From positions 62,001-126,000 of the forward strand of contig JBLDXI010000033.1 in the NCBI GenBank assembly GCA_047495785.1: a stretch of 64,000 nucleotides of DNA, in the 5' to 3' direction. The number at the start of each line of letters is the position of its first letter. Position 1 is the stretch's first letter. Positions 26,063 through 59,509 of this stretch are shown here, one piece after another. The notes under the pieces were generated by a model. The model saw nothing but the letters and a program-made list of their open reading frames with translations, was not told the origin of the DNA and ran no database searches. Both the position numbers and the translations under genes were made by a program. The stretch is from Lepidodermella squamata (Eukaryota > Animalia > Gastrotricha).

Positions 26063-28872
26063 CTATAAAACCCATTTCTGCATGTTACTTCGAATTTTCG
26101 AAGGAAGGGCGTCATCTCTGCTGGCCATCTGAAACGGCGTAACACCATCCTTATCAGCCTGGTTGATGAAGAAAGCGGCTTCAGGACGCTCGGTCAAATA
26201 TGACATCATGTCGTAACGTTTATCAATCACTGCTAAATGTAACACGTTTTCGCCTTCGTTACTCAGCGCTTTCACGCTAGCGCCTTTTTCGAGCAAATAT
26301 TTGAAAGCTTCAATGTGACCGTTCCGCGCAACTAGCAAAAGAGGGGTCAACTTATCGGGCTCAGTTGGAATTTCAATAGCGTGGCTGACACGGTCGAGTA
26401 GGACTTTCAAGCAATCAATAGAGGATTCACATCCAAAAGCAGCGCAGTGAAGAGTCGTGAACCCATAACCATCCGGTAGCAACTCACAGCCAGGAAATAG
26501 TTCCAAGGCCAATTTCATCAAGTCGCCATTTCCAGACTGAGCGCAAACGTGGTAGAATTTTTCCATCTCGGATGTTTCGGAATGAACGTCAGCACCGCGC
26601 TCAATTAGAATTTTAGCGGATTCGAAATATCCGTATCTAGCGGCTTGTAACAGAGCGGTTTCACCGCAGTTGTCTTTGCGCTCCATTTCAAGACGTTTCT
26701 TGAGAAGCCACCTGAAATAATCAAGAAGTAAACAATGGCGTAATATGCGAAATGCGCAGTAGGAAGGTATCGTTATAAGCTGGATTAACTTACTTCAAGG
26801 TATCGACTTTAAGACTTTCGACTGCATGGTGGAGAAGCGACTGGCCGTCAAAGTCGACCTGGTTTAGAAAATCAGGATTCTTCTTCAACAGAAACTTCAC
26901 CACGTCCAATTTATCATTTGATACAGCGTGCATTACAGGCAAAACGCCACAAGCAGACCGGTGGGAAAAGTTAGCATTCCGCTCTAGCAAATATTTCACA
27001 ACATCACAGTCGCCTTGAATCGCGGCTAAACATGCAGCGGTATTGCCGTTCTCGTCACTATCTACAGCTTCAAGGTCAGCGTTTTCATTTTCAACAATGA
27101 ACTTTACGACATTTAAGCGGCCATTCTTCGCAGCTTCGTGCAGCAAAGTTAGCCCGTTACTTTCACGGACGTTCTTTAAAGTTGGCTCGCGTGTCAGCAA
27201 GATTTTCAGGACTTCAAGATGACCACCATTCGAAGCGATATGCGCTGCTGTCTTCCCATCGGAATCAGTTGCTAAAATATCGATTCCAGATTTGGACAGC
27301 AGATAGTTGATTTTGCTCAGCGAACCAGATTCTGCAGCTTGCAGCAAAAGCGTTCTTTTGCTATCTCGTTCATCTTGATGCTCGATGACAAGCGGTTCGC
27401 AACCTTTTGGAATTTGATCGAAAAGCAGTTCGAGACACAGGCACGAAGACATTTTAGCAGCGTCATGCATTTTGTGGTACTCAGAATTCTGAAATGCAAT
27501 TAGAAATGTGACAGTGAAGCAGTGATCCGACTAGGTCCAGCTCTGAGGGAGGTAACTCGAGCATTTTGAGCCCAAAATTTGCAAATCAACAGGGGGAACC
27601 CTTACGTTTTACAGAAATTTTCTGACGCCAGGGGGGTTCGTTTTTTACCCCCCCCCCCCCTTTTACCCCCCGTTCTCGGAACACTGCAGTGAAGAAAACG
27701 GAATCTCATAGGTAATCAATTTTACCTTTAAATGGGCTTCTTCAGGCGCAGAAGACTTGGTAAAACTGACGTCAGTCACCTTCTGAAGCATATCGGTAAA
27801 TTCGACGGTAAGAGACTTGTCAGTCCACGTCAGCTCGATCTTAGAAAATTCAGATTTTCCGACTTCGAACTGCAGCAACTCATCGTACTATACATTTCAA
27901 AACATGACATACATATTGCATTTTCAATCTTCCTAAATTCCGTTCAGTTTCAAACCTTGATCCGTGCCTTCCTCGATAAGTCATGGAATTTTAAAACATT
28001 ACTGTCCGACGCGAATAGGAGAGAGGCACCATCGCAGTCAGAAGACAACTTATTAATTTCATCCAACCCATCCAAAGATTTAGTGGAAACAACTTTCTTC
28101 AACATCTCAAGCTGTTTTGCTTTGAGTTCAGAGGTTTTTTCTTTAAGCTGCTGAGCCCGCTGCGCAACGGCCTTTTGCAAGGCATCCAAAAGCTCTTTGC
28201 AGTTGGTTTCGATTTTCTCGTTGATTTCACGAGCGTCCTTTTCGATATCAGCTCGAATGGTGTCAGCCTGATTACTGATGCGGGAGATCGATGAGTCGAA
28301 TGATTCACGGAGCTAATAAATACAAATGCCGTTATACGTTGAAACCAATTTTTTCCCTTTTTAGGTCGAAAAAGGTATTCACATTATGGCTGGCAAATCT
28401 GGCCTCGAGTCGTATCCTTTCCAGGTGAAAACGATAGCACATTGAGCAGAAGTTACCATCACAGTGATTGCATTGCGTGACTTCGTCTTTCCCCACAAAT
28501 GTCAAATGACGACAACCTTCGCCCAGCTTTTTCTTCTTCGAATCCATCATATCGTCGCTTTTCAAAGCTTCGACCGCTCTTTTCACAGCGTAATTTGTAC
28601 GCACGGCTGCGAGGCCATTTTTCGGCAGAGTTGTCACAGTTCTGCATTCAGGGCACGAGATCGTCGTTCTATCGTTGCCCTCATTCAGCTTTGAGAGACA
28701 AGCGGCGCAAATCGAATGGCCGCATTCGTTTAGAATTTTAGCTTCTGGGCAAAGCTCCAAGCAGACGGCACAGCTTAAAGCCTAAGAAATTCAAGTTACG
28801 TGGAATTTACGGCGTTTCAATAAATTAAACCTCAAGAATTGAAGCCCTGATAGACTTTGAGCTTCCAGCCAT
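26063..28872 (-). CDS. RING-B-box-coiled-coil-ankyrin protein A (subfamily 1)
   Basis: Six exons. MAGSSKSIRASILE | ALSCAVCLEL...CGHSICAAC...CPEC (C3HC4 RING), then a B-box-like CRH...CNHC...CSMC...H, a coiled-coil exon, a linker exon and two ankyrin exons. All GT-AG junctions are in frame. Confidence 0.88.
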
Positions 28873-28994
28873 TGTAAATAGATTTAAGGTACTACAAGAC
28901 AAACAAAAATTAGCCAGAGAACAATTTATTTAACTTCAGCATGCAAGCAATATCTTTACAAGAGCTTGGATGTTGCGCGTTATTCAAAAACTGC

Positions 28995-31900
28995 TCAAGC
29001 TGATGTAAGTTGTGAGATTTTACGGATAAGTTCTTCGGGCAAACAGAAAACTTCCTTAGCGATTTGATTGATAGTCTCTTTGTTTTTGTTCCGATGCGTA
29101 ACCAAGAATTTAGATTCGGGCAGGTCAAGTAAATGTGACACGACAGAGAAAGATTTATCCCTCAGTGCCACGCCGAGAACATTGTCACCATTGTCGGCCG
29201 TCGCCCAAAGACTAGCACCTTTCGACAGTAGATATTTGAAAATATTCAAGTTGTCAGTTCTCGATGACACAAGAAGTGGTGTCAGATGGTCAGACGTGCA
29301 TGATTCGATCATATGCCAAGTTTTTTGAAGCAAATAATCGACACAGTCAGTCCCTTTCAGACCCGCCGCTGCTGAGTGGAGTGGGGTCCACAGAAAATCA
29401 TCGACAACTTTTTCGCTTTCAGGGTAGAGATCCATGGCATACTTCAACAGTTCAAGATTTCCAGACCATGCGCAATGGTGAATTAGGGTTTCCCCGTTAG
29501 AATCTCTAGCTTTTAAATCAGCCCCACGCTCGAGCAACAACTTAACTACATCCAAATGCCCGCTTTCAGCCGCTATCAGGAGAGGGGTGACACCCTCACC
29601 ATTAACGACTTCGAGCAAATCTGGAAATGTCTCGCATAGTTTCTGAACAATTTCAACATGACCGTTGTCAGCAGCGAGAGATAGCAACGACTGGCCGAAC
29701 TTATCTCGTTGCAATGCGGCATCTGGCGAATGATTAAGCAAAAATTTAACTATTTCCGACTTTCCCGTCGAGCATGCCACGGCTATTGGCGTACGCTCTT
29801 TTTCCAAGTCAGCTATTTTAAAATCGGCACCTTTATCAATTAGGTATTTGACGACTTCAAGATTGCCACTACTGCAAGCCAAATGAGCAGCAGTTTGCGC
29901 AGCAACCCCACTGTCTCTTGCGTTCAAGTCAAAAGAACAATCCTCGACCAAATACTTGACTACATCTAATTGCCCCGCCAGAGCGGCATCATGAAGGCAA
30001 TTTGATCCGTGGTGATCTGTTTGTTCCATCAACTCCGGCTTCTTCTCAAGAGCAACTTTCATCACGTCTAAACGACCGTGCTTAGCTGCGATATGAGAGG
30101 TCGCCCTTTGGTTCGAATCAATAGCTAATGGGTCGGCACCAAGCGCCAGAAGGTAGTTAATTGCTTCAAGCGAACCAGAAGCAGCAGCCTGAAGCAGAGG
30201 GGTTCGTTCGGAATCTCGTTTGTCGCGGTGTTCAATGACCAATTTGACAAAGTTTTTCGGAATTCGGCCAATGACGTCCTTGAGGGCTTCGATTTCTCCA
30301 CGGGAAGCGGCTGCGTGAAATTCGTGGTATGGATCAGTCTAGATTAGGAAAACGTTGAGAAAAATTAAATTAGGAATATCGAAACTTCAATTTCGCTCAA
30401 CAAATCGACAACATATATGCTTTCAAGGGGTCTGACTACCGTGCTCATCGCCCCGGCTATCGGCTATCGGGTGCTCATCTACGCTGTTGCTGATCTGCGG
30501 GATCACCCCTCGCCTGCCTATGTCGTGGTTTGCGCGCAAAAGGCGCTCAGGAGCACCCGGCTGTGAAGGTTGAAGCCTCGAGGAATCTCATTGATCTACA
30601 CGCTATCGTTCCTTTGTACCAGCGTATCTTTAAATACTGGCCAACAACAACTAACCGATGAGCAAATGGACGATTTGCAGGCAATAGTCGTCGCCGAAGT
30701 AATACATTTGAGAAACGCGTTCAGCTTCATAAAGCGGCTGAACAAGTTGTGGTTTAGTGCGCTCACCCTGGCGCGCTGTTGGTAGGAAAGGTTCCGCTAC
30801 CTGGAAGTTATCGTTGGAGCGATAAAACGGCATATGGCAAGGGAGATACAAAGTTGGAAATTGACAACACCGATTGCTACAGCGCTGCAACAAAGAAACA
30901 AGCTGCAGCGCCTTCATCCACATACGGAAAAAGCTTATATTAAAACCACCCTGAATGCCGCCATCTCAAAGCAAATAGAAAATCTGGTCGCGAAGAAAAT
31001 TGCAATGACTGTGAGCTCTGCCTCCGAGCTATGACAGAAAACTTCAACAGCAAAACCGGCATGGGTCTGATCTAATGAATCTACTGAAAAAACACGAGGT
31101 GCAAACGCAGTTGTTGGCCGCAAGACAAGACCGCAAAAGGCAAATCCATCACCGACGGCAAGGCAAAAGCTGAACTCATTGCCAAGACATTCGCCAAAGC
31201 AGTCTCAACTCCTGTTGTGACATCAGCATTCAGCTCAGATCACGATTTCTGGCGTGCGATAGAGGATGGGATCGAGTCTAACCCAGCCGCACAGCCAATA
31301 TGCATGCCAGAAAAGCTGAATCTCGAAATCTTCAATGAAAGAATTGTTTAAAAAGCTATAATAATTCAATGCTCTCGGTCATGAAGAAATATCAAACAAT
31401 GTGATTAAAATGGTGGTCCAAGCCTCTCACTTACGCCTTATGAACAGAGCCTGAATTGCGGCTATGTACTATGTACCAAAGACTTGGAAGATCGGGATTA
31501 TAAGTTAATAGTTAATAGAAACTTGCCATCCAGCCACCAGTTCGGATTTTGGCGAGGCAAAAGCGCCACAGATACCCCATTCCGTCTGGTCAACGACGTG
31601 GTCATAGCCCTTTCCGTCACGACACTGGAAGCTAGTCACTATAGCCCTGAACTTCAATAGCACATTTGACGTAGTATCGTAATCATGATCGCCTCTAGAT
31701 GATCGCCTCTAGAATTTTGCCGTCGGTCGGGCCCGTGGCTTACGAGAAGTGTAGTAGACATTGCCTATGCCATGAAGCCGGGGTGCCTAGAAAGGCTGCA
31801 GCCGAGCTATCTCGAGCTGGAGCATGTGTTGGGTCGTATTCTTACCTCAAAATTGTTGCGTTTCACTACTCTGACAATCGATGTATCTTCGCAATATCGA

Positions 31901-33231
31901 CTGTTTTCGTTTCTCTAGTGATAACAAACAAATCAACAGAATGAACGTAAATTTCTGCAAGTCGTAATGTCTAATGTAAACTACGAACCACTACTACGCT
32001 GAACCGACACGGCCTCGACTCCAAAAACCACGAACTGTGATTCCCGATTGCACGATCGGTTCATCTCCATTCTGATTTCCTAACTCCTAACTCTCTCAGG
32101 TCGCACCGCAATTAAGCCGTATAAAGTAAAACAATACCTCAGAACCGATATCCTTGAACTTGTCAGTTTCCGCAGTAACACTCGTGCTTTCCGAAATGAC
32201 AGTAGTTAAACGCTCAATGATGGATTGATTCTCGAAAGCAAAAGAGATTCTCGACAGAGCTGCATCGCATTTCCCGATGTTTAAGAATTCGCCCAACTGA
32301 AAAAACCCGTTGATATTAGATTTTACATTGATAAGTGCTAACCTTGCATCTCTGCTCTTTAGCTAGAAAATGCAATGATATAACATCTTCAGCGGACTGG
32401 CACAACGGCGACGAGCTTACGAGTGTTGACGCCAGAGTTTCCACCTCGTCCAACTTGCTCATCCAGTCTTTCGACATGACATCGTTGAAACGTTCATGTA
32501 AGCGACCCCGCATTCCTTCAACTTTAGCAATCAGTTCGTCGCATCGATTATCAATCACATTCTTGAACCATTCCACCAAGGCTTCGCCGGATGATTTTAT
32601 CGAACTTTTGACCGAATCAGCGTTTTCGTCAATTTTATGGCGAATCAAATCAGCTTGTTTGTCAACCTCAGCAGTGTTACACTCAAATTTCTCGCGAATC
32701 TGAAAAACAGAGAAATATCACAGGGCGTTTCAGATTGTAAATTTCGGATCACCTTGTGACACGAAAATAAAGCTTCGAGTTTGACGCACTCAATGTGAAG
32801 CAAGTAACATAACGAACAGTAGCTTTCTTCACAATGGGGACATATCGTCATATCATTTCTCGCCACAAAGTGAGCATGATTACATTTTTCGCCCGGTTTC
32901 GACCACTTTGCGTGCTTCGATTTCGCTTCATTGCAAACCTCGGCAACTCGTTTCACGGCGTAATTTGTACACAAACCAGACGATGGGATTTTAGTCTCTT
33001 TTCTGCACTCCGGACAAATTGCCGATTTTTTCGACTTGTCGAGAATTTTGGCAAGACATTCAGCGCAAATAGAATGACCGCAATTTGTCAAAACCTTTGC
33101 ATCAGAGGATAATTCGAGACAAACAGCGCAACACAGAGCCTGATATAAATGAATAATGAGAAAACTCGTTTATAATCAAAGTGAAGGGGAACAACTTCAA
33201 GAATGGCACTATTCGATGTGTCGTTCACCAT
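28995..33231 (-). CDS. RING-B-box-coiled-coil-ankyrin protein B (subfamily 2)
   Basis: MVNDTSNSAILE | RING/B-box exon | coiled-coil | linker ending KDIGSE | 1.8-kb intron | a single ~450-aa ankyrin exon starting TDPYHEF. Confidence 0.85.
30550..31680 (+). mobile_element. Degenerate LINE ORF2 (RT) fragment in the gene B intron
   Basis: Fragmented frames contain KAKAELIAKTF, PKTWKIGII, QFGFWRGKSATD (about 31538-31573), LVNDV and ALNFNSTFDVV, interrupted by stops and frameshifts. Confidence 0.75.
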
Positions 33232-33416
33232 TCTGAATGAATAATTTCACGTAAAGGCCGCTCCTAAATGGTAAAAAGGCAGAAAAATGTAGGTTCTGGG
33301 TTCCAGTCGCAAACATAGCAAGCATTAAGAAGACAAACAAAAATTAGACAAAGAATAATTTATTCAACTTCAAAATTGTTCGGCATATGCGGAAATTGCC
33401 TGTAATTGAAAACTGC

Positions 33417-36400
33417 TCAGGCTGATGCAAGCTGTGAGATTTTACGGAAAAGGTCTTCGGGCAAACGGTTGACCTCCTTAGCAATTTGATTGATAGTCTC
33501 TTTGTTTTTGTTCTGATGCACAACCAAGAATTTACCTTCTGGCAGGTCAAGTAAATGTGACACAATGGAGAAAGATTTATTCCTCAGTGCCACGCCGAGA
33601 ACATTGTCACCATTGTCGGCCGTCGCCCAAAGACTAGCACCTTTCGACAGTAGATATTTGAAAATATTCAAGTTGTCAGTTCTCGATGACACAAGAAGTG
33701 GTGTCAGATGGTCAGACGTGCATGATTCGATCATATGCCAAGTTTTTTGAAGCAAATAATCGACACAGTCAGTCCCTTTCAGACCCGCCGCTGCTGAGTG
33801 GAGTGGGGTCCAAAGAAAATCATCGATAACCTCGTCGCTTGCTGGGTATAAATCCATGGCATATTTCAGCAGTTCAAGATTTCCAGACCTTGCGCACTGA
33901 TGAATTATGGTTTCGCCATTATTATCTCTAGCTTTTGTATCAGCTCCAAACGTGACCAGAAGCTTAACTACATCCAATTGACCGTATTTAGCAGCTATCA
34001 GAAGAGGCGTGAAGCCGTCGCAATTAACGATTTCAAGCAAATCTGGAAGTGTCTCACATAGTTTCTGGACGATTTCAACATAACCGTTACCAGCAGCAAG
34101 ATATTGCAACGACTGGCCGAACTTATCTCGTAGCAAAGCAGCCTTTGGCGCATGATCGAGCAAAATTTGAAACAGTTTAGAATTTCCTCTTGCGCATGCG
34201 ACGGCTATTGGTGTACGGGCAAGTTCGAAGTCAGCTATTTTAAAATTGGCACCTTTGTGAATAAGATAATTTATGACTTCAAAATTGCCACTTATGCAAG
34301 CCAAATGTGCAGCAGTTTGCCCAGTAACCCCACTGTCTCTTGCGTTCAAGTCAAAAGAACAATCCTCGACCAAATACTTGACTACATCTAATTGCCCCGC
34401 CAGAGCGGCATCATGAAGGCAATTCAAACCGTATCGATCTCTTTGCTCCATCATCTCGGGCTTTTTCTCGAGAGACATTTTTAACACACCTAAATGACCA
34501 TGCTTAGCTGCGATATGGAAGATGGCTTTTTTGTTCAAATCAACAGCTAATGGGTCGGCACCAAGCGCCACGAGGTAATCAGCTGCTTCGACTGAACCAG
34601 AAGCAGCAGCCTGAAGCAGAGGAGTTCGTTCGGAATCTCGTTTGTCGTGGTGATCAACGACCAATTTTACGAAGTTTTTCGGAATTCGGCTGATCAGGCC
34701 CTTGAGCGCTTCGACGTCTCCAAGGGATGCGGCTGCGTGAAATTCATGGTATGCATCACCCTAGATTAGGAAGCAAACAAAGGGATAAATTAAGATTAGA
34801 ACTGTAATTTGAAATCGAAAACTGAAAAACTATAATAATATCTATATCTGGGCTTTGAATTGACGATCGTAGTTTTTACACGACGGAGGCGTTCTTTAAT
34901 GCCATATCGCTCAATATCCTCTATATAAAGGCTCTGATAAGAATACTTCAAACGTTTCCGCATTTAAGAATTAACGATCAAATTCGTCATGATGGACGAC
35001 GTCGCGGTCGCAACGACCGCGGTGGAGCAGCCTCACACTAAACTCACACTCAACTGATTTTGAGTCAAGTTTCAACACTGTATATTTTAATTATCTCTCG
35101 ATCAACGATTACTTCACGCCCTACCTCATTACCGCAGCATCTTGACGGCATGGTCATTGCCTATCTAGAGCAGCTGGGGGCTGCGCGTCGTTTATAAAGC
35201 CGCTACATGCGGCCTGCATGGTCAAAGCTATCTCTTCGATACAACAGACAGATCTTGTTAAAAAATCCCTTCAAAAGTGCAGCTTGACTCAATCTAGGCA
35301 CCGGAGAGAAAGGAACGAGCTCAACGAAAGAAATCTGATTCATCGCCGAACAGCGGCACCAGGCTGAGGAGAAGACATGCTTGGCATAAGCCGCTATTCC
35401 TGAAATTCCACGCTAGCCGTTTAAGAGGCGCTATCCTTAGGGGTTCAAACCTTGCCCTGGAAAAGATCTGTGAGTTGCTGAACTGAGACCCGATAAAATC
35501 TTCAACTGGATTGTAAGTCTACCTTTTCACTGTTTTTTTGCACTTCGAACTCAAAAAGGACAAATACAGAAATATTCCACTTGAGTTATAACCAACCTAA
35601 TTACAGTCGGTTATTCGTTGGATTCAGCAAAAATATTTCATTGGGCTTTATTCAACAGCCGGCTCGTCTATTTGAACTCTTGCGAAGCGTCTTATGGCCC
35701 TGCCGCTTATACCTGCTCGAAAAGTGCCGACCGCATTTCAACTAATATCAAAGACCAATTGTCGAATGCTGAATCAACAAGCATAAATTCAACAAGTCTA
35801 TGAGTACTTCAAAACACAGTGGTTTGGCAAGGTGAAGATTCAGGACTGGCGAAGATCAACCGAAAACTGAGGCCGTCTCATTCATAATTTTACAAAGAAA
35901 ATATATTTAATAATGAATTTACTGACATATTGACTGATATTGGCTCTATATCTAGACCAGCTCGATGAAGTTCGATGCTCTGTTACGTCGCAAGTGGTAA
36001 TTACGTTGTTTAGTTGCGTTCGCTGTTTCGCGTTAACGTTATTCTGTCGGGCTATTGATGAGTTCTATCTAATTGTCTAAAAACTTAAACAAATGCTTCC
36101 CTTTATCTATGGCCTGAGCTAATTAATAAAAATGTATTCTGTTATATGGCCGTGTCATTTTATTGTTGGTTTCTGTCTTTCAAGCTTTTTCATAGCTTTA
36201 ATTAATTTACAAAAAGGGCAGAATAAGAGCAATTCCTTTCAAATTTAGAAATCAAGCTATCTACGTTTTGAACAGCTGATAACAGCGCTGGTGGGAATTT
36301 TCAAATTTTGTTGGCAAGAAAAACCAAGCCGTTAGCGAAATTGATGGCGATATTAGTTTCGTCGGCGAAAAAACTAAATTGATAGCAGGAAAATGTACAC

Positions 36401-37506
36401 CCACAGAAATTACCTCAAAATCGATCTCTGGGACTTTGTCTCTTTCAACGGTGACATTCGTGCATTCCGAAATGACAGTAGCTAAACGCTCCTTGATGGA
36501 TTGATTGTAAGCAAAAGAGATTTTCGACTTAGCCGCGTCGCATTTCTCGATGTTTAAGAATTCGCCCAACTGCAAAACACCCATTAATATTAGTTTTTAT
36601 ATCGATAACTCCCAACCTTGCTTCTCTGTTCTTTCGCTAGAAAATGCAATGATATAACATCTTCAGCGGACTGGCACAACGGCGACGAGCTTACGAGTGT
36701 TGAAGCCAGAGTTCCCACCTCCTCCAACTTGCCCATCCAGTCTTTCGACATAAACTCATTAAAACATTCATGTGTACGACCCCGCATTCCTTCAACTTTA
36801 GCAATCAGTTCGTCGCAGCGATTATCAATCACATTCTTGAACCATTCCACCAAAGCTTCGCCGGATGACTTAATCTGACCTTTGACAGAATCAGCGTTTT
36901 CGTCAATTTTACGGCGTATCGAATCAGCTTGTTTGTCAACCTCAGCAGTGTTACACTCAAATTTCTCGCGAATCTGAAAAACAGAGAAATATCACAGGGC
37001 GTTTCAGATTGTAAATTTCGGATCACCTTGTGACACGAAAATAACGCCTTCAGTTTAACCCGCTCAATATGAAGCAAGTAACATAATGAGCAGTAGCTTT
37101 CTTCACAATGCGGACAAATCTCCACATCACATTTAGCGATGAAGTGAGCGTGGCTACATTTTTCGCCCGGTTTGAAGCGAAGGGCAGGTTTTGTTTTTTC
37201 TTTCATCACCATTTCGGCGACTCGTTTGACAGCATAATTTGTACGTAAGCCGGCTTTGGGAATCTTAGTCTGCTCTCTGCATTCCGGGCATATTGCCGAA
37301 TTATTCGATTTTTCGACAAGCTTGGCTAGACATTCAGTACAAATAGTATGCCCGCAATTTGTCAAAATTTTCGCATTAGGTGATAATTCGAGACAAACAG
37401 CGCAACACAGAGCCTGATACATACTGAATAATAAGAAATCTTGTTTATGATCAAATTGAAGTGGAGCAACCTCAAAAATTGCAGTACGCGATGTGTCGTT
37501 CACCAT
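33417..37506 (-). CDS. RING-B-box-coiled-coil-ankyrin protein C (subfamily 2)
   Basis: Same exon structure as gene B, with a ~1.65-kb intron between the linker (EIDFE) and the ankyrin exon (GDAYHEF). Confidence 0.85.
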
Positions 37507-48217: not shown

Positions 48218-49971
48218 TATCCACAATATCAATAATAGACTAAAATTAGGAATAAACTACAAAATTTTCCTCACAGGAAGTGGGGCACGTGAACTATGCC
48301 CAGATCCAGATGGTGATGTAGGATGCTAAATCCTCTATCTGTGCCTATGCATGGAGGTGATACTAACATTTAAATCCAGGACTCATTTTGAAATTTTCGG
48401 TACTATAATGTACTATGCGCGGCCTTATGCTGCTGTTTTCGCTGTACATAGCTGTACATCCTCCGTGCCTCTCACGTTTTTTTGTTAATGCCGTCGAATC
48501 ATTTCGATTCGTGGATATTTTATAATTCCGTATTTTCCGGCAATGCCAGCGCCATCGGTGGCGCTTTTCTCCGACGATTTCTGCCTGGCGTAAGCCCTGT
48601 GGCTTATTCCGGCGGCCTCTCTGGCGGTGCGAGCCTGCCCGACTTGGGGCGGGCTGCCTTTCGTTCTGAATTCTGAAGCTGCCGTACACTGGCCTGCTCT
48701 GGCGGCTAAGCGGCCGTTGCCTGTCGACCTATTCAAGTTTCATGTTTGACCCGTTTGACCCGGCGCGGGTCGGTGCTGTTCGGGAGCCGGTGCCGGCCCG
48801 CGACCTGGATGAGGCGGGCGGCGGATGGCTGGCTGTCGGTGCGGTGTCGGTTTGGCGGTGGTGGATGGGCGGCGGGTGGCTTGCCGCATTTCGGCGCCTC
48901 GACTCGGCCGGCGTTGGCGGCCATGGACGCTTAGATTTTTATGTACATAATTTTTGTGATCAATTGATTGTTATGGTTGTGGTTGCTAACTCGCTTCGTT
49001 GCCGCCCATGTTTAGCCTGCGGGCTGGTGGGCTGGAATTATACCCGAACTAGATTAATAATAAACCACACATTTCTCTCTACAGTTTCATGAATGTCCCT
49101 GCGACTGTCACGGGTGTTCGCCTTTGCTGAGTCCCACATCGAAGCTACATCATCATCTAGTCACTCAATTTCGGCTTGATCCTTAGATCGACCCGGCGCA
49201 ACCTGTTCACTACCTTGGAGACCAACATTGACGAAGAAAATTAACTTAATTCGGGATCAAATTAGTGCCCAGCCAATTTGAGGCCAACTGCGAAATGATA
49301 TTACGACTTGCCTACAAATCGCACGCTCCCCGAACGTCTTTTTCTTTCTATGAAGACTTGTTTCTAGCTAAATGGTCGAATTTCGCCGAGGCTGAGCCAT
49401 TTATCGCCCACGTTCGAGGAAAATGGCTAGACTACAAGTGACATAACACGTGGATCGAAGGTATCGCACCTGGTTTACCGTCAGCCAACAACGGCAACAA
49501 AAACTACAATGCAGTTATCAAACGCGACTTCGCGCATCGCGATCAAATGCCATTGGACGGGACGACGGAAACAAAAATACACTGAGATTATTTGCAACAA
49601 CAAAGTTGAATGCGACGATGGCGCTGAAAAAACGCAGCAACCACATCGACAGCGGAGACAGCTGAAGACGCGGAAGAACAGGAACAGGTCCGTTCGGACC
49701 CTAAGTTGGCGTTGACATATTTACCTCAAGGGCTCTTCCGGCCCGGCGCCGCAATCGCCACCCTCACAACTCGAGCAGACAAGTTAGCCACGGCCTTATG
49801 CCCGGGGTAGTCAGAAACGCAGCTTCCCTTTACCTATCCTAATGTTCCGATGCGGCATCGGCGAAGCCCCCGATCATTGACGAGTTCACAGTCAGTCTTG
49901 AGTTGCCCGAGTTGGTTAACCTAAAATTCGCAAAACTGAATGACATATAATGACATATAATAAATATACCG

Positions 49972-50021
49972 CTTTCCACTGCTGAACCACTCGTATTTGA
50001 CGAATTCATACCAACTTCCAT
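49972..50021 (-). pseudogene. Remnant first exon of a subfamily-3 gene (MEVGMNSSNTSGSAVE...)
   Basis: Homologous to the first exons of E and H, and its upstream region matches 45183-45580. It has a 1-nt extra base before the donor and no RING exon follows. Confidence 0.65.
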
Positions 50022-50374
50022 TTGACAACTTGATGGATAAAGTATTCAATTAATAATCTTAGAAGAATCAATAAATTTCACAAAACTTCATCACTTGTTA
50101 CCCTTCGTTATGCCCTATGAGCATGTATTTGCACCAGTATGTCAAAAGTCAATCACATTCCGCGCTTCAGAACCACAAAAACACTATCTCTAAACACTAA
50201 AATTGAAATAAAATAAAAATACGCCAATAGAGTTCATGATTAACCAAAAAGAGTGACTGTGTCATTGCTTCAGATATTTATTAATTTACAAAGAATGTAG
50301 TAGCTTTATAAATCGGGTAGAAAAGAGCGAAGAAAATCATCTGCATATACATATTTCTCCTCATAGTTATGGAC

Positions 50375-53077
50375 CTATAATTGCCATTTCAGCATTTCAT
50401 CATCCAGTTCTGACGGAAAACACTCATCATCGTAAGCCAGTTTTAACGGCGTGTACCCATTTTCATCAGCCTGGTTCAACAAAAAAGCAGCTTCTGGACG
50501 TTTGATCAAGAACGATACAACTCTGTATTGCTCTTCTTCAATGGCTACATGTAACACGTTTTTCCCGTTACTATTGCGTGCCTTGATATCAGCGCCGTTT
50601 TCGAGCAGAAATGCCAAATTTCCAATGTTTCCCCGTCGCGCAGCTAACAACAGAGGGGTCCACTTCATAGGCTCAGTTGGCATATCGATGGCGTGACCGA
50701 CGCGTTCGAGAAGGAATTTCAAGCAATCTATAGCATCTTTCCCATAAGAAGCAGCGTGCAAACTCGTGAATCCGTAATTATCAGGCAACAATTCGGAGCC
50801 AGGAAACAGCTCAAATGCCAATTTTAATAAATCAACATTACCAGACTCGGCACAAACGTGGTAGAATTTCTCCGCATTCGTATTTTCAGCCTGGATATTT
50901 GCTCCGTGATCGATCAGAATTTTAACAACATCGTAATATCCTTCCCTGGCAGCTTGTAACAGAGCAGTTTCGCCATTTTCATCAAGGCGGTCTATTTCGA
51001 CAGGTTTCTTGAGGAGCCATCTAAATTAGAGGAGAGGCAGGGAAAATTGAAAATTTGCCCAAATGAAATACAATCACGACTACTTGAATAATTATTCGAA
51101 TTTAGGGCCACGGGGCCATTTTGTCGAAAACATCTGGCTCATTTGACTTACTTTATGACATTAATATCACCGCCATCAACTGCATGCCGCAGCAGCGACC
51201 TCCCTTTTGAGTCAACCTGGTTCAGGAAATCAGGGTTCTTCTTCAACAGCAGCTTCACCACATCAAGGTTTTTATTCGAGGCAGCATGCATTATTGGCAG
51301 TGCGCCATCTGTAGAGTCACGATGGGCGAAATTAGCACCCCGCTCAAGCAAATACTTTACAACATCGCAATTGCCGTTAATCGCAGCCAAAATTGCAGCA
51401 GTATATCCATTCAATTCGTCAGTGGCTTCCAAGTCGAATTTCTCATCTTCCACCAAGAATTTTACGACATTCAGATGACCGCCACTCGCAGCCTCGTGTA
51501 GCAAATTGAACCATTTGCAGCTACGTAATCCTTTCAAACTAGGCTCCCTTGCCAGCAAAAGCTTTAGGACATCCAAGTTGCCATTTCGCGAAGCAAGGTG
51601 TGCCGCCGTTCGCTGTTCGAAATCCATCGCTAGCGTATCGATTTTAGGTCTTGACAGAAGAAATTCGACTTTTTCAATCGAACTGTCAGCTGCAGCTTGG
51701 AGCAGCAATGTTTTATAGCCATCTCGCGCATCCTGATGATCAATAACGATGGGTTCGCAGCCGGCTGGTATTTGCTGGAAGAGCACTTGAAGCGATTCAA
51801 AACTACCAGTTCGAGCAGCGTCATGGATTACGTGGTATTCAGTGCCCTGAAATGCAAAAACAATAGAAAATCAAATTTACTCTAGCTATAATGAAATCGC
51901 GAATCGCGCTATTGAACCAGATATAGAGAGAAAAGATCAGGAAAAGCCGTAAAATGTACCGTCCTTATTGCTTCATATATAGCCACAGGTGTAGAATCAA
52001 CGTCGGTTGTCTTGGTCAGGATGTCCGCAAATGTTTTGACAAGATCAGATTCAGGCCACGTTAATTTGACCTCAGAAGGATTCCATTCGTCACGCTCGTA
52101 TCGCATCAGCTTACCGCACTAAAATTAGAAAAATGTGTAAAACCCAAGTTGTAAAGCAGGGTTTCCAACCTTTCGTCGAATCGCTCCTGATAATTCATGA
52201 AATTTCAAAATACTTTTGTCTGAGACGAATAACAGAGAAGCATTGATGCATTCGGAAGCCAACTTTTCAAGTTCTTGCAATCCATCCGCTTCATCGTTTG
52301 AAATCATTTTCTCGAATATTTCGAGCTGGGCCATTTTGAACTCAGCCGTTTTTGCCTTAAGCTGTCCAGCCCGCTTCTGAATAGTTTTCTCCAAAGCTTC
52401 TAAGAGCGCTCTGCAACTGCTGTCAATCTCCGCATTGACCGCATCGGAAACGCTTTCAATTTTCGAGCGAATGATTTGGCACCGTTTTCTAACGCAGGTC
52501 ACCGACGAGGTGAAAGTTTCTCGAAGCTGAATATAAATGAATATAGGTATATTTTGATATTTTAAGCTAGGTTTTTACGTTATAACTGGCATATCTAGCC
52601 TCTAGGCGTATTCTTTCCAGGTGACACCGGTAGCAGTTCTCGCAGAAGTCCTTTTTGCAGTGTTTGCACCGTGTGATCTCATCTTTCTCAACAAACGCCA
52701 GATGATTGCACCCTTTGCCTAATTTTCTCTTCTTCGCACCAATCGGCCCGTCGCTTTCTAAAGCTTCGATTGCTCTTTTCACGGCGAAATTTGTCCGCAG
52801 AGCTGCGAGACCATTCTTTGGCAGAACAGTCTCAGTTCTGCATTCAGGGCAAAATACCGATTTCTTGTTATCTTCATTCAGCTTAGAAAGACATGTGGCA
52901 CAAATCGAATGGCCGCATTCGTTCAGCATTTTAACTTCGGGGCTCAGTTCCAAGCATACGGTGCACCTCAAAGCCTGAAAACATAAGAACTGAATGTTTG
53001 CAACATATTTTTAATGATTAATGATTAGTTACCTCAACAATCGAACTCCGGACAGACTTCGGTTTTGCATCGGTCAT
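50375..53077 (-). CDS. RING-B-box-coiled-coil-ankyrin protein G (subfamily 1, closest to F)
   Basis: MTDAKPKSVRSSIVE, with a six-exon structure. Flanking non-coding DNA aligns with that of F. Confidence 0.87.
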
Positions 53078-54142: not shown

Positions 54143-56681
54143 TTAAGCCGCGATGATTTGACGCATTCGTTCGAGAAGATCAGCGGGAAAATTAGGCTTT
54201 GCAGCAACGATTGGCAAGACGCCAGAGCCATTTTTGCATTGCAACAGCTGTCCAGCAACAGGAAGCTTCAGAATACTGTCAATCACATCAGGAGATAAAT
54301 GTTCAATCGCAATATGAAGAGCGTTGTTCCCGCTATCGTCAACAATAGCTGGATCGGCTCCTTTGCTGATGAGGTATTCAAAGGCTGAAACGTGATTAGC
54401 TTCGGCACAAATCATCAACGCAGTAGTTGGCGGCTGCTTTTTTACAGAAGCTTTCAGATTAACAGGCGTGGAATGAGACTCTATGAAATAGGACATCATT
54501 GCCGTAGCAGCATCGTCATTTTTACATGAAGCGGCGTAGTGCAGCGCCGTTTCGTTGTAAGCCGTTGGGAATTTCTCGATCATGTATTTCACAACAGGCA
54601 AGCTACCACTCTCAACAGCGCGGAAGAAGGCAGTCATTTTGGAATTTTGCTTGCAATTCACATCGAAGCCGTTTTCGACGAGAAGCGCAACAGCTTCCAC
54701 GTTGCAACTATAAGCGACAACATGGATCGCAGAAAGCGTATTGAGCTCTTGATTTCGACAGGTTGCCATCAATTCCTTCATTACATCAACACTACCCTTG
54801 AAGCAAGCAGCCAGAAAAGCAGTGTAGCCAGCTTCAGTAGTAGCATTCAACATGGTAGCATCCCTACTCGCTATAATTCTCACGGCTTCAACCTGATTAT
54901 TGGTGGCGGCAACGTGAATCGGCATCATGTCTTTCCTTGTCAACCGCATGTTTGCTCCCAGTTCCAGAAGAAACTTGACCATCTGCGAGTTCCCCTTTTC
55001 ACACGCAACATGAAGAGCAGTGTTCCTACTGGAATCGGCTATGTCAACTATTGCTTTGAATTGCTCAACAGCACCAATAGGGACCTTGCCGTTGGAAGCC
55101 ATCAAATGCAAAACTGTTCGGCCCTTTCTATCAAGAACTTTCACGATTGAAGGGTCTATTTTCAGGATATGATCAAGTACTTCTGGGAAACTAGCCGCCA
55201 GATGGCAGATTGTTTCGCCGTTGGTATCGCCCAGTTTCAAGTCTTCCAATGACAAGCGAGGCGTCAACGTTTGAAAAATTTCCATAGATCCTGAAGCCAC
55301 CGCTTGATGAAGAACCGTTCTTCCTTGATCAGTTTCATCAACATGCCGAATTATCAAATCAAGTCCAGCTTCCGGAACCTTGCTTAGCAAATCTTCGAAG
55401 TTTTCAGTTTTCCCATTTTTCGCTGATTGATGAAATTCCCAGTACATATATTCCTGGGTATTGTAGGGAATACATTTTTGATACGAAATAAGCGAGAATA
55501 ACTGACCTTTGCATCCAATTTCTCCACTTGAGTAACGACGCGGTGAAACGTGAAACTTTTGCTCAATAGGCGTTTCGTTGATTCTACAAAGCTGACGTCA
55601 ATGAGTGTCGCGTAATTTGAATTGGCAGCTTCGCTGTTCTCAATCGCCAGCATTTCGACAACCTCAAAATGGAAATGGCAATACGAGCATAATTAGTGTT
55701 CTATTATGACTCATCTGAATGACACAAGCTTACATTTTGACACTGTTCTGTTACAGTCGCATGGAGACGGATAAATTTCGCGCCTGAGTTGAACAAAAGT
55801 GGGGCTGATTGTACATCTTTGATCAGTCCATCAAAATCGCCTGTGGCGTCCATCAGCTCGGCACTGTTTTCCAACGAGTGCAGTTGATCCGCTATGAAAT
55901 GGTCAACTTGGCTGGTTAAATGATCACAATGCTGTTTAATGGCATCCTGTAATGAAGCAATCAAATTTTCTCCGGTTTTTCGAATTTCCTCCTTGATTTG
56001 CACAGCGCTATTTTTGATTTTCGACCGAATAACATCAAGTTGGCCCAGGGCATGCGAGCGAGCATTTTCGCGTTTAGATTCAAGCTGAAAGTTCGAAAGA
56101 GATATATCGCAGTTTGAAACTAAACTGTTAAGATTTACTAACCCAGCTGTGAGCGAAGAAAATCTCACTTCGCATGTGTTCAAGATGAGCAACGAAACAA
56201 GATGGACAAAATTGAGCGTCGCAATGGCCGCATAGTTTCGCGTTAGATCGTGACAAGTTGGAAAGATGCATACAAGATTCGCCCAGCTTTGACTTTTTCA
56301 TGTTGTCATTTTCCTCCTTCAAAACTTGTACGGCTTGTTTCACTGCGATATTGGCTAAAAAATTCGATTTAAGGTAAGACTATTTCAAATTTACTGCGCT
56401 TACACTTGATTGTATCCATCGTAACATTCGCCTTACTGCGGCACTCTGGGCAAACAACTTGGGTGAATTTCGGCATTTTGATCAATATCGATTCGATGCA
56501 TTTGGAGCAGAATGAATGACCACATTGCGGAAGAATTTTCGGGTCGTTTGCCAATTCGAGACATATTGTGCACGTAAGAGCCTGAAGTCATAAAAGAGAA
56601 ACGGTCATTCAAGATAGACCTCACTAGACATACCGCTTCCACTGGGCAGCCAGTATTAGACGAATTCGTGCCAATGTCCAT
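54143..56681 (-). CDS. RING-B-box-coiled-coil-ankyrin protein H (subfamily 3)
   Basis: MDIGTNSSNTGCPVEA | ALTCTICLELANDPKILPQCGHSFCSKC...CPEC | B-box | coiled-coil | linker | 434-aa ankyrin ORF. Confidence 0.85.
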
Positions 56682-56944
56682 TTAATGGTTCGATATAATA
56701 ACAAATGAGTTGTTACTTCTAAATAAAATGCGAATAACATAGCTTTTTCGGGGCAAGATATCAAGGCTTTTCGTTTGACTTTACGTGAATTGATATAACA
56801 ATTATTAAAAAAAAACACTGGTGTAAAACTGAATAGTTTCAATACCCTCGAATGGGTCAAAGTTAACAAACATTTACTGCAAAAATTTAAAAAGGATAAA
56901 GTAACAGGAAATACTGAGATGCAAGGATTTTTCTGCAACTTGTC

Positions 56945-59509
56945 TCAATTTGATGCAAGCAAAACAAATTTGCGCCCAATATCTTCCGGCAAGTTCGCAT
57001 CCTTCTGGGCGATTTGAATAGGCGTATTGCCCGCATTGTTCTTGCGCATAGCAAGAAACTTGGCTTCGGGTAGGTCAAGCAAATAGGTCACCAAGTCATA
57101 CGCTTTTTCCTGGAGAGCTTTGCCTAGGACATTGAAACCATTTTTGTCCGTCGCCCAAATGCTGGCACCCTTCGATAGAAGGTGTTTGAGCATTTGCAAA
57201 TTTGGATACGTAGCTGCAATCATAAGCGGCGTTCCTTCAGCGCTTGGCAACTCTATATCCTGCCAATTAAGCTGAAGTAAATAATCGACGCAGGAGGTTC
57301 CTTGAGAGCTATATGCAGCTGAGTGCAGCGGCGTCCATTTCAGATTATCCACTACCCGCTCAGAATTCGGACATAGCGACAAGGCGTATTTCAGCAGCTC
57401 AACATTGCCAGATTGCGCACAAAGGTGAACTAAGCTTTCGCCGATATTCGTTTTCGCCTGCAAATTAGCACCACGTTCAATCAAAAACTTGACCACATCG
57501 AAATGACCATTTTTAGCGGCGAGAAGCAGCGGAGTGTAACTGGTTTTATCAACGATTTCCAGTAAATTTGGCATTGTCTCTATAATTTTGCCCACAGCTT
57601 CCAGATGACCGAATGCAGCAGCGAGAGCCAAAATAGAGTTATCTTCCTTATCTTTGATCGAGCTAACGTTCCCGGAACGCTCAAGCAGATAGTCAATCAC
57701 AGCTAAATTCCCACTCGACGCCGCAGCAAGTATCGGAGTACGACCTTCTTGTGTTTCGCCAATATCGAACTTCGCACCCTTTTCGTAGAGGTACGCAACG
57801 AATTCGACATGTCCTTCAAATGCGGCAAAATAGGCAGCAGTTCGCCGAGTCTTTTCACTGTCTATTGCATCCAAGTCCACAGAGAATTTTTCGACCAGAT
57901 ATTTTGCAACTTCCACTTTGCCGAAAGACGCCGCTGTGTGTAACAAAGTGAGCCCTTGTTTATCCCTGAGATCTTTGAGTTGGGGTTTACGCTCAAGAAC
58001 CAATGCCAGAATATCTAGATGACCCTGCTCAGCTGCGATATGAGCCACGGTCATGCCCTCTGAATCACGCGCCAAGATATCGGCGGCTTGTGATAGAATA
58101 TAGCTCACCAGGTCTGCAGAGCCGTCAGCAGCAGCTTGTAGAAGGACGGTTCGATTGTTATCACAATTATCAGTATGCTCTAACACAAATCTGATCCACT
58201 TCTTTTGAAGTCCGTTAATCAAATCTTTGAAACTTTTCGAATTCCCCTCTGTGGCAGCCAAGTGAAACTTTTGATATGAATCAGCCTTGATGGGTTACAT
58301 AAAAGAATGTATGATAATCAGGTGATTTAGCTGAAGAAATCACCTCGGCATGATCATTTTCAGCATTATCCGAACATTCTAGGGCAACATTGGTATTTTC
58401 AGACAGCACAGAAGCCATGGCTTCACGGATAGATTCTTTCCACGTCATCCCAATCTTTGACTTGCCAGGTTGAGATTCGCCCAAGCTCAGCAGCTTGCAT
58501 AACTGAACATACATTCTTAGATATTAACCAAAGATGCCATACAAGGAGTTTAATTAGACAAAAACTGTCGTAATTGAGCGCTGGACCCTCATCGATTATT
58601 TTTTAATACGTTTTTTAATAATAATTACCTCGTTTCTCATTTCCTTCGCAAGACTGTGAAGCGCTATTACGTCTTCACAAGTCGTGTTCAGCATTGATGA
58701 GTTCTCAAGCGTTCCAGACAGCTTTTCTAGCTCATCGAGCTTTTCACGCCAGTCTTCCGATGTTACCTTACACAACGTTTCGCGTCGCTGATATCGTAAG
58801 TCCTCCGCAGCTTTAATCAATGCATCACAGCGCTGATTAACCATGCCTCTAAACCAGTTGACCAAAGCTTCGCCCGAGGAGTTTATTTCCCCTTTTATCG
58901 AACTCAAACTTGAGTCAATCTCATTTTGAATCGCATTAGCTGAAGCGTTAGTCTTATTTATGTTGCTTTCAAACTGCTCCCTTATCTAAAAAATGGACAA
59001 CTCGGCAGTTCACTTTTAAATTGCAGTGGCAAAAATTACGTCGTGACATGAGAAAATAGCTTCCAGCTTAACGCGTTCCAAGTGAAGAAGGTAGCACGAT
59101 GAGCAGAAAAATTCTTTACAATGTGGACAAAGCTCTCGTTCATCTTTCGCGAGAAAATGAACATGCCCACAATTTTCACCAGGTTTTGACCGCTTGGTGC
59201 GTTTAGATTGCGCCTCGTGGTAAACCTCAGCGACTCGCTTCACAGCGTAATTTGTGCGCAAGCCCATGGGAGGAATCTTGGTCTCCTCCCTGCATTCTGG
59301 GCAATTCACCGATGTTTTCGATTGTTCAGTCAGCTTAGCGAGGCACTCAGCGCAGATTGTATGACCGCAGGCAGAAAGAATTTTCGTGTCAGAAGGCACT
59401 TCTAGGCAGACAGCACAGCAAACAGCCTAAAATTAAGGCAAAATGTTGCAGCAAAATTGCTGAAAAAGTGTCAAACCTCAAAAATAGCATTGCTGGACGA
59501 GCTAGCCAT
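56945..59509 (-). CDS. RING-B-box-coiled-coil-ankyrin protein I (subfamily 2)
   Basis: MASSSSNAIFE | AVCCAVCLE...CGHTICAEC...CPEC, B-box CGH...CPHC...CSSC...H | coiled-coil | linker | 438-aa ankyrin ORF. All introns are short. Confidence 0.87.

What the first reader, a model, noticed from the sequence alone, without database searches (positions are those of the whole stretch)
26063..59509. Tandem array of nine TRIM-type (RING-B-box-coiled-coil) genes ending in ankyrin repeats: candidate new TRIM class and diversifying recognition system
Seen: once spliced by hand, the scattered ORFs form nine co-oriented genes. Each has a C3HC4 RING, a B-box-2-like motif (CxH-x11-CxHC-x4-CxxC-x3-H), a coiled-coil, a short linker exon and roughly 11-13 ankyrin repeats. 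They fall into three subfamilies by sequence and intron pattern: A/D/F/G, B/C/I and E/H. Known: the standard TRIM classes end in PRY/SPRY, COS/FN3, PHD-bromo, NHL/filamin, MATH, ARF or TM domains, and I know of no ankyrin class. Clustered, fast-evolving TRIMs (TRIM5, fish finTRIMs) are often antiviral. Inference: a lineage-specific family of E3 ligases that uses variable ankyrin surfaces for substrate or pathogen recognition and evolves by birth-and-death.
Basis: partly seen in the sequence, partly recalled or inferred. Interest (0 to 1): 0.88.

Follow-up and report, generated by a model that had tools for sequence, protein, structure and literature searches.

The report
Tandem TRIM-like ligases with ankyrin tails
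An unidentified invertebrate genome carries nine neighbouring, intact genes for ubiquitin ligases built like TRIM proteins but ending in a long ankyrin-repeat arm; the design is real and rare, but nothing yet shows an immune role.

Summary
On the minus strand, 26063-59509, I built nine complete GT-AG gene models of 749-767 aa. Each has a small first exon, a C3HC4 RING, the zinc motif C-x-H-x11-C-x-H-C-x4-C-x2-C-x3-H, a helical exon of 117-119 aa, a linker exon of about 53 aa and 11-13 ankyrin repeats. The three subfamilies (A/D/F/G, B/C/I, E/H) are confirmed. A tenth, truncated E/H-type 5' remnant lies at 49953-50144.

The RBCC half comes from TRIM-NHL-like ligases. Its best relatives are amphioxus, Pomacea, Tachypleus and Ptychodera nhl-1-like proteins, and the RING model fits the TRIM2 RING. 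The zinc motif fails Pfam's B-box model and fold searches, but it matches those relatives' B-boxes profile-to-profile (97.8%).

None of the 150 best RBCC relatives has ankyrin repeats, and none of the 120 best ankyrin relatives has a RING or B-box. TRIM surveys in the paper library never mention ankyrin.

A related species in metagenomes has its own tandem array, with the intron after the B-box at the same position and coiled-coil, linker and ankyrin in one ORF. That argues strongly for single genes. No RNA data exist for this organism.

All parts are under purifying selection (dN/dS 0.07-0.43). Canonical ankyrin contact positions reach 0.7-0.9 in the youngest pairs, never above 1. An immune role is untested.

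Scan notes list six more such arrays elsewhere in this genome.

The parts
56945..59509 (-). Gene I (B/C/I subfamily), 758 aa, 5 coding exons: 59477-59509, 59040-59426 (RING + B-box-like), 58629-58985 (helical/coiled-coil), 58344-58502 (linker), 56948-58285 (12 ankyrin repeats)
   Evidence: Model with GT-AG introns of 50-126 nt and no stop. Pfam RING and Ank hits. Repeat count.
54143..56681 (-). Gene H (E/H subfamily), 751 aa, 6 coding exons; the RING (56404-56581) and the B-box-like motif (56143-56354) are on separate exons; linker exon 55507-55662; ankyrin exon 54146-55453
   Evidence: model; Pfam; motif, here followed by H-x2-H.
50375..53077 (-). Gene G (A/D/F/G subfamily), 765 aa, 6 coding exons; the ankyrin domain is split by a phase-2 intron
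49953..50144 (-). Remnant of the 5' end of an E/H-type gene (promoter-proximal DNA plus an exon-1-like ORF 'MEVGMNSSNTSGSAVE'); no RING or later exons follow it
   Evidence: blastn gives 76.6% identity to the 5' end of gene E, 45119-45317. The ORF is seen.
45581..48217 (-). Gene F (A/D/F/G), 765 aa. Exons: 48173-48217 (Met exon), 47727-48122 (RING + B-box-like), 47322-47678 (helical/coiled-coil), 47106-47264 (linker), 46326-47020 and 45584-46226 (13 ankyrin repeats)
   Evidence: model; Pfam; RING model, mean pLDDT 87, fits the TRIM2 RING at 36% identity, rmsd 1.8.
42674..45132 (-). Gene E (E/H), 749 aa from the ATG at 45132. The ancestral exon-1 ATG is now ATC and the exon-2 acceptor is gone. 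An alternative upstream in-frame ATG lies at 45297.
37761..42271 (-). Gene D (A/D/F/G), 765 aa, with a 1839-nt intron between the coiled-coil and linker exons
33417..37506 (-). Gene C (B/C/I), 759 aa, with a 1653-nt intron between the linker and ankyrin exons
28995..33231 (-). Gene B (B/C/I), 760 aa, with a 1799-nt intron between the linker and ankyrin exons
   Evidence: A gene-conversion tract is shared with C.
26063..28872 (-). Gene A (A/D/F/G), 767 aa, 6 coding exons

Best explanation
This is a tandem array of nine intact, co-oriented genes, plus one truncated remnant. The genes encode RING-type E3 ubiquitin ligases of the TRIM (RING / B-box / coiled-coil) kind. The RBCC half descends from TRIM-NHL-like ligases. 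The usual C-terminal target-binding domain (NHL, SPRY and so on) is replaced by a solenoid of 11-13 ankyrin repeats.

Inferred mechanism: the RING has all eight zinc ligands and an Arg right after the last Cys, and it recruits an E2~ubiquitin. The helical exon dimerises the protein as in other TRIMs. The concave ankyrin surface selects the protein to be ubiquitinated. Paralogues differ most at the canonical ankyrin contact positions, so they probably have different targets.

The array grows by tandem and block duplication (E/H-type plus A/D/F/G-type pairs H-G, remnant-F and E-D). It is patched by gene conversion and loses copies. What the targets are, and whether they are foreign or self, is unknown.
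For: Shown:
- Nine complete GT-AG models of 749-767 aa have splice positions and phases conserved within subfamilies.
- Pfam finds the RING and the ankyrin repeats, with 11-13 repeats per gene.
- The RING-B-box model (mean pLDDT 87) best fits the human TRIM2 RING, at 36% identity and rmsd 1.8 A.
- The best sequence relatives of the RBCC part among 1.84 billion proteins are RING-(B-box)-CC-NHL proteins of amphioxus, Pomacea, Tachypleus and Ptychodera. Their alignments run through the zinc motif and into the helical region.
- The zinc motif matches those relatives' B-boxes by hhalign (probability 97.8%, E 1e-12). One of those B-boxes passes Pfam's zf-B_box cut-off.
- Every region is under purifying selection (dN/dS 0.07-0.43), so both halves are functional.

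Single-gene reading (inferred):
- RBCC exons are followed by ankyrin exons in 9 of 9 genes.
- In no gene does the in-frame extension upstream of the ankyrin exon hold a Met. In 7 of 9 the first Met inside that exon is 57-166 residues in.
- A related species in ENA metagenomes has microsynteny PTPLA-PAAF1-TRMT1-COX5A with this window, and COX5A is 75% identical. It has its own tandem array.
- In that array a canonical donor sits at the homologous position after the B-box. Coiled-coil, linker and ankyrin lie in one uninterrupted ORF, and one alignment is colinear across that junction.

Evolution of the array:
- Subfamily identities are given.
- The remnant and shared upstream DNA are seen.
- B and C share a 100% identical intron 2 and a 92% identical exon 3, next to a 77% identical exon 2.
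- The window genes and the relative's genes form separate clades.
- dN at canonical contact positions is 2-3 times that of framework positions.
Against: - There is no transcript evidence. The only runs holding this DNA look like DNA, since they also cover introns and spacers. They hold the housekeeping neighbours to the same degree.
- Pfam zf-B_box, a PDB sequence profile and two fold searches of the isolated zinc motif gave no B-box match.
- Seven of nine genes lack an obvious eighth zinc ligand.
- The coiled coil is inferred from position, Pro/Gly-poor composition and homology. A heptad-periodicity test was not significant.
- Ligase activity, dimerisation and target binding are all untested.
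Confidence: 0.78

Rival explanations
1. The genes are the architecture described above, and they also form a diversifying intracellular immune-recognition repertoire. On this reading the ankyrin surfaces are under positive selection to bind pathogen proteins, like the TRIM5 or finTRIM SPRY domains.
For: - The family sits in tandem arrays and is expanded independently in two related species.
- Scan notes report six more arrays in this genome (I did not check them).
- Canonical contact positions evolve 2-3 times faster than framework positions and reach dN/dS 0.69-0.87 in the youngest pairs, B-C and F-G.
- Copies are born and lost.
Against: - No class of sites exceeds dN/dS 1.
- Surface positions of any ankyrin protein are less constrained than framework positions, so the pattern is not specific.
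- There are no expression or induction data.
- No immune gene or domain is linked to the array. The neighbours are WD-like, Cys-loop-like and GPCR-like genes.
Confidence: 0.2
2. The RBCC genes and the ankyrin genes are separate, merely adjacent transcription units (gene pairs), so no RBCC-ankyrin protein exists.
For: - No RNA evidence joins them.
- In A and H a Met lies within the first 7 residues of the ankyrin exon.
Against: - The order is kept in 9 of 9 genes here and in at least four units of the related species.
- The junctions are introns of 52-237 nt (1.65-1.8 kb in B and C) with GT-AG ends and a phase conserved within each subfamily.
- In 7 of 9 genes a stand-alone ankyrin ORF would lose 57-166 conserved residues.
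- In the related species, coiled-coil, linker and ankyrin are one continuous ORF.
Confidence: 0.04
3. The array is decaying: duplicated, no longer functional copies.
For: - One truncated remnant exists.
- Gene E has lost its ancestral start codon and an acceptor.
- Three genes carry long, unrelated intron insertions.
Against: - All nine models are open over 749-767 codons.
- dN/dS is 0.07-0.43 in every region of every pair tested, at dS up to above 1.
Confidence: 0.03

Closest known systems
TRIM-NHL ligases (class VII: TRIM2, TRIM3, TRIM71, C. elegans NHL-1 and the many invertebrate 'nhl-1-like' proteins)
   Same: - They are the best sequence relatives of the RING, zinc-motif and helical part.
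- The RING model is closest to the TRIM2 RING.
- The zinc motif is homologous to their B-box.
- The domain order RING, B-box, coiled coil is the same.
   Different: - There are no NHL or filamin repeats. The C-terminus is 11-13 ankyrin repeats.
- The first ligand pair of the B-box is C-x-H with an 11-residue loop.
- The family sits in tandem arrays of diverged paralogues.
Clustered, fast-evolving TRIM-SPRY genes (TRIM5/6/22/34 cluster, fish finTRIMs)
   Same: - Both are tandem clusters of RBCC ligases.
- Copies differ most in the presumed target-binding module.
- Both show duplication, gene conversion and loss.
   Different: - The binding module is an ankyrin solenoid, not PRY/SPRY.
- Positive selection and an antiviral role are shown for those families (my own knowledge, and the TRIM reviews listed). 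Neither is shown here.
Other ligases that use ankyrin repeats to pick substrates: MIB1/2 and plant XB3/XBAT (ankyrin then C-terminal RING), ASB (ankyrin + SOCS box) and FEM1 (Cullin receptors), BARD1 (RING, ankyrin, BRCT)
   Same: A ubiquitin-ligase module is combined with ankyrin repeats as the likely substrate-binding surface.
   Different: - Here the RING is N-terminal and is followed by a B-box and a long helical region.
- Pfam finds no SOCS box, BRCT or second RING.
- P0083, a RING+ANK protein seen, has the opposite order and no sequence similarity to the RBCC part.

Membership tests
TRIM / RBCC family | N-terminal C3HC4 RING finger | tested here: met
   - Pfam hits zf-C3HC4 and zf-RING_UBOX above their cut-offs.
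- The eight ligands are invariant in the seven aligned genes and are also present in the E and H models.
- The model fits TRIM2, TRIM23, TRIM21 and TRIM25 RINGs.
TRIM / RBCC family | B-box zinc finger directly after the RING | tested here: inconclusive
   For:
- hhalign of the motif against the aligned segment of ten TRIM-NHL-like relatives gives probability 97.8%, E 1e-12.
- That segment passes Pfam zf-B_box in P0121 (37.4 bits) and is just under the cut-off in P0124.

Against:
- The nine genes give no zf-B_box hit, only sub-threshold ANCHR-like_BBOX.
- The PDB profile search gives only PML B-box 1 at E 0.55.
- Foldseek and VIA-align on the isolated motif (mean pLDDT 82.5) find no B-box.

My reading is a divergent B-box.
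TRIM / RBCC family | Coiled-coil region after the B-box | tested here: inconclusive
   - The exon is 117-119 aa with 2-7 Pro+Gly and 26-37% charged residues.
- The predicted helix starts inside the zinc motif and runs to the exon end.
- phmmer alignments to TRIM-NHL relatives extend to query residue about 206-260.
- The heptad-periodicity test is not significant.
- The full region could not be folded, because spliced sequences have no reference.
TRIM / RBCC family | All modules on one polypeptide, in the order RING, B-box, CC, C-terminal domain | tested here: inconclusive
   Gene models, splice phases, missing start codons and the related species all support it. No RNA data are available.
TRIM-NHL (class VII) | C-terminal NHL repeats (with or without filamin) | tested here: not met
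   Pfam finds only ankyrin families in the C-terminal exons. The genes are therefore not members of class VII, although the RBCC half is most similar to it.
Known TRIM classes I-XI | C-terminal domain is one of COS/FN3/SPRY, PHD-bromo, NHL/filamin, MATH, ARF, TM or none | tested here: not met
   - The C-terminus is 11-13 ankyrin repeats.
- The list of classes is from my own knowledge.
- The word 'ankyrin' occurs 0 times in three TRIM evolution surveys held in the library: PMC2533329, PMC3503706 and PMC3137616.
MIB / XB3-XBAT type RING-ankyrin ligases | Ankyrin repeats N-terminal or central, RING at the C-terminus | tested here: not met
   The RING is at residues about 15-60 and the ankyrin repeats at about 320-750. 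P0083, which is of that type, shows no similarity.
ASB (ankyrin + SOCS box) substrate receptors | C-terminal SOCS box | tested here: not met
   No SOCS-box family appears among the Pfam hits of the ankyrin exons at E <= 0.01.

The most novel reading that the evidence does not exclude
A large, lineage-specific family of TRIM-derived ligases (this array plus the others noted in the same genome) acts as a germline-encoded repertoire of intracellular binders. Variable, DARPin-like ankyrin surfaces recognise pathogen or selfish-element proteins and mark them for ubiquitination. This would be an invertebrate counterpart of TRIM5 and finTRIMs built on a different recognition fold.
Probability: 0.18. 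Interest if true: 0.8.

Novelty: new variant of a known kind. Interest (0 to 1): 0.55.

Why it matters
TRIM ligases are classified by their C-terminal target-binding domain, and their clustered, fast-evolving members are a major arm of intracellular immunity in vertebrates. A TRIM-derived family that has swapped its NHL propeller for a long ankyrin solenoid would add a new class to the family. It has expanded independently in at least two related invertebrates.

It would also be a natural example of ankyrin repeats used as a diversifiable recognition surface on an E3 ligase. That is the design protein engineers build by fusing DARPins to ligase domains. If the paralogues bind different targets, the family offers a ready-made set of binder-ligase pairs. 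It also allows a test of whether invertebrates use such arrays in defence.

Tried and rejected
- RNA evidence: two run searches and one lay of reads (5,401 letters, under the 6,000 limit) found only DNA-like runs. X1 covers introns and spacers and shows hairpin joints. The housekeeping neighbours give the same picture, so expression cannot be judged.
- Ankyrin exon against 5.8 billion proteins: only generic ankyrin proteins at or below 35% identity were found. None of the 120 listed has a RING or B-box pattern or RBCC similarity.
- Full-length architecture search: not possible, because spliced proteins have no reference and read-through of stops is not accepted. InterPro/CDART is not available.
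- JGI metagenome scan with the RING-B-box alignment: the first alignment was too diverse. The second gave 97 pattern matches, but none was confirmed.
- B-box by Pfam, PDB profile, Foldseek and VIA-align: no support. Only the profile-profile comparison worked.
- Heptad periodicity for the coiled coil: not significant.
- Linker and helical exons against Pfam: nothing.
- Rfam on the whole window: nothing.
- Long introns of B, C and D: no similarity to each other or to anything in the window.
- Taxon: COX5A points to arthropods, PAAF1 to a mollusc, and the Atlas hit to arthropods. The taxon is unresolved beyond 'bilaterian invertebrate, probably protostome'.
- Sample name of the related contigs: not found in the paper library.
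- Viral or mobile-element origin: rejected because of the conserved spliceosomal introns and the host-gene context.


Full report
**What is there.** The window has about 42% G+C. All pieces of the finding lie on the minus strand. Stop-to-stop ORFs between 26066 and 59426 repeat one series nine times: a RING piece, a Cys/His-rich piece, a charged helical piece, a short piece, and one or two long ankyrin pieces.

I enumerated frame-compatible GT...AG pairs at each boundary and kept the junctions shared by paralogues. This gave nine complete coding models with no internal stop.

| Gene | Span (with stop codon) | Length |
|---|---|---|
| A | 26063-28872 | 767 aa |
| B | 28995-33231 | 760 aa |
| C | 33417-37506 | 759 aa |
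| D | 37761-42271 | 765 aa |
| E | 42674-45132 | 749 aa |
| F | 45581-48217 | 765 aa |
| G | 50375-53077 | 765 aa |
| H | 54143-56681 | 751 aa |
| I | 56945-59509 | 758 aa |

Introns are 46-237 nt. The exceptions are three long ones: 1799 nt in B and 1653 nt in C (both linker to ankyrin), and 1839 nt in D (coiled coil to linker).

Except for E, every gene starts with a tiny exon (M...E) and an intron of about 50 nt that ends ...cag|GCT, just before 'A-L-x-C-x-V-C-L-E'.

- A/D/F/G: 58-78% identity, ankyrin domain split by a phase-2 intron.
- B/C/I: 49-80% identity, one ankyrin exon.
- E/H: 64% identity, RING and zinc motif on separate exons.
- Between groups: 26-38% identity.

**Domains.** Pfam finds RING families above their cut-offs and very strong ankyrin hits, with Ank_2 E-values down to 1e-79. 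An iterated repeat HMM places 11-13 repeats at a spacing of about 33 residues, from residue about 320 to about 750.

The motif C-x-H-x11-C-x-H-C-x4-C-x2-C-x3-H is present in all nine genes and in the metagenome relatives. Eight positions are invariant.

**Is the zinc motif a B-box?** Direct tests fail:
- There is no Pfam zf-B_box hit, only sub-threshold ANCHR-like_BBOX in 5 of 15 sequences.
- A PDB profile search gives nothing significant. PML B-box 1 scores E 0.55.
- A confident model of the motif alone (mean pLDDT 82.5: two short strands and a long helix) finds no B-box with Foldseek or VIA-align.

Indirect tests succeed:
- In an alignment with the closest outside relatives, six ligand positions line up with theirs.
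- That segment is recognised by Pfam as a B-box in those relatives. P0121 scores 37.4 bits, above the cut-off. P0124 scores 23.7 bits. Most of the others have B-box families among their top sub-threshold hits.
- A profile-profile comparison of the two sets gives probability 97.8%, E 1e-12.

I read it as a divergent B-box. Its spacing is nearer the C-x2-C type of the nhl-1-like proteins than a classical B-box 2. Only E and H have the terminal H-x2-H.

**Where the RBCC half comes from.** A full HMMER search of 1.84 billion representatives with the 279-aa RING-to-coiled-coil ORF of gene F found no close homologue. The best hit had E 4e-26 at 28% identity, and only 19 hits fell below 1e-10.

The long hits are RING-(B-box)-CC-NHL or filamin proteins. 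They include Branchiostoma C3Z055, Pomacea LOC112555240, Tachypleus LOC143234321 and Ptychodera 'RING finger protein nhl-1-like'. Their alignments run through the zinc motif and into the helical region, up to query residue about 254.

The RING-B-box exon folds confidently (mean pLDDT 87.4). Its best structural matches are human TRIM2 RING structures (36% identity, rmsd 1.8 A), followed by TRIM23, TRIM21 and TRIM25. The RBCC half is therefore a TRIM-NHL-like module.

**Is the architecture known?**
- None of the 150 best RBCC relatives has ankyrin similarity.
- None of the 120 best ankyrin relatives has a RING or B-box pattern or RBCC similarity.
- The one RING+ANK protein seen, P0083, has the reverse order and is unrelated.
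- In the paper library, three TRIM evolution surveys contain the word 'ankyrin' zero times (PMC2533329, PMC3503706, PMC3137616). Three other papers I opened do not describe such proteins.

I could not query InterPro, so the absence is not proven.

**One gene or two?** No RNA evidence can be had. The only runs holding this DNA are a likely source run and a low-coverage run that also covers introns and spacers. The housekeeping neighbours (PAAF1, TRMT1, COX5A) are held to the same extent.

The structural case is strong nonetheless:
1. The order is kept in 9 of 9 genes, with GT-AG junctions and conserved phases.
2. Upstream of each ankyrin exon the frame is closed or holds no Met. In 7 of 9 genes the first Met inside the exon is 57-166 residues in.
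3. Short fragments at 36-39% identity led to ENA metagenome contigs L001-L003. These hold their own tandem array of RING-B-box ORFs, each followed by a 400-490-aa ORF with ankyrin hits.
4. The same sample yields contig L005, with the gene order PTPLA-PAAF1-TRMT1-COX5A, as in this window at 8105-14987. COX5A is 75% identical and PAAF1 59% identical. This is a related species.
5. In that species the RING-B-box exon ends at the homologous residue with GTAAGT or GTAGGT. After 55-67 nt comes an acceptor, and then coiled coil, linker and ankyrin follow in one uninterrupted ORF.
6. One alignment is colinear across that junction: L002 g1 residues 59-329 against gene C residues 215-458.

**Selection and turnover.** Nei-Gojobori estimates give the following.

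| Region | dN/dS |
|---|---|
| RING | 0.19-0.28 |
| Zinc motif | 0.07-0.10 |
| Coiled coil + linker | 0.22-0.43 |
| Ankyrin | 0.23-0.39 |

Both halves are therefore constrained and the genes are functional.

I then split the ankyrin codons into two classes. The first holds the six canonical contact positions per repeat, those randomised in designed ankyrin proteins (from my own knowledge). The second holds the framework. Contact positions have 2-3 times the dN of framework positions. Against pooled dS they give 0.87 (F-G) and 0.69 (B-C), against 0.31-0.32 for the framework. This fits either relaxed constraint or diversifying selection on some sites. It does not exceed 1.

The array shows birth and death:
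- F and G share 85-87% identical upstream DNA.
- An E/H-type 5' remnant lies between G and F. This suggests duplicated pairs H-G, remnant-F and E-D.
- B and C share a 100% identical intron 2 and a 92% identical exon 3 beside a 77% identical exon 2, a gene-conversion tract. Regional dS agrees, at 0.21 against 0.87-1.19.
- In a tree of the RING-B-box exon, the window genes (support 86/90) and the relative's genes (99/97) form separate clades. Expansion or homogenisation happened within each lineage.

**Earlier notes of this scan.** Six other windows of the same genome were flagged for the same kind of array. One follow-up reached the same verdict: real and rare, with no immune evidence. I did not see those windows. 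If the notes hold, the family has several dozen members.

**Verdict.** The 'new TRIM class' reading is reasonable as a new variant of a known kind. The 'diversifying immune recognition' reading remains a hypothesis.

Noticed in passing
window 15236-25571 (ORFs 16014-18329, 19457-21772, 22900-25215, minus strand): There are three copies of a 771-aa class-C-GPCR-like intronless ORF. They are 100% identical at the nucleotide level and sit in a perfect tandem repeat with a 3443-bp period. This is either a very recent triplication or an assembly artefact.
   Followed up: partly
window 45040-45330: Gene E has lost the ancestral exon-1 start (ATG to ATC) and the exon-2 acceptor. The old donor gtATGtg now supplies an in-frame ATG, and the former intron is read as coding.
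   Followed up: partly
window 32343-32752 vs 36617-37026: There is a gene-conversion tract between B and C. Intron 2 is 53/53 identical and exon 3 is 92% identical, next to a 77% identical exon 2.
   Followed up: partly
window 30339-32137, 34761-36413, 39525-41363: The long introns of B, C and D (1.65-1.84 kb) have no similarity to each other or to anything else in the window, although B and C are otherwise 80% identical. They are probably independent insertions. Their content is unidentified.
   Followed up: partly
window 48366-48970: A G+C-rich stretch with Pro/Arg-rich ORFs in three frames lies in the enlarged F-G spacer. Its origin is unknown.
   Followed up: no
window 26063-59509: Spacers between co-oriented genes are very short: 122, 185, 254, 263, 402 and 448 bp. 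I did not test it.
   Followed up: no
window 8105-14987 and L005 1-4450: The microsynteny PTPLA-PAAF1-TRMT1-COX5A is conserved with an ENA metagenome contig of a related species. There PAAF1 is a single 405-aa ORF.
   Followed up: partly
window 59616-60938, 61035-62207, 62710-63882: Upstream neighbours on the same strand are a two-exon WD-like gene and two intronless Cys-loop-receptor-like ORFs of 391 aa.
   Followed up: no
window 54470-55926 (run X2): Besides contigs identical to the window (depth about 64), run X2 holds 90-95% similar contigs at depth about 23 over parts of gene H. These are a second haplotype or a near-identical paralogue elsewhere.
   Followed up: no
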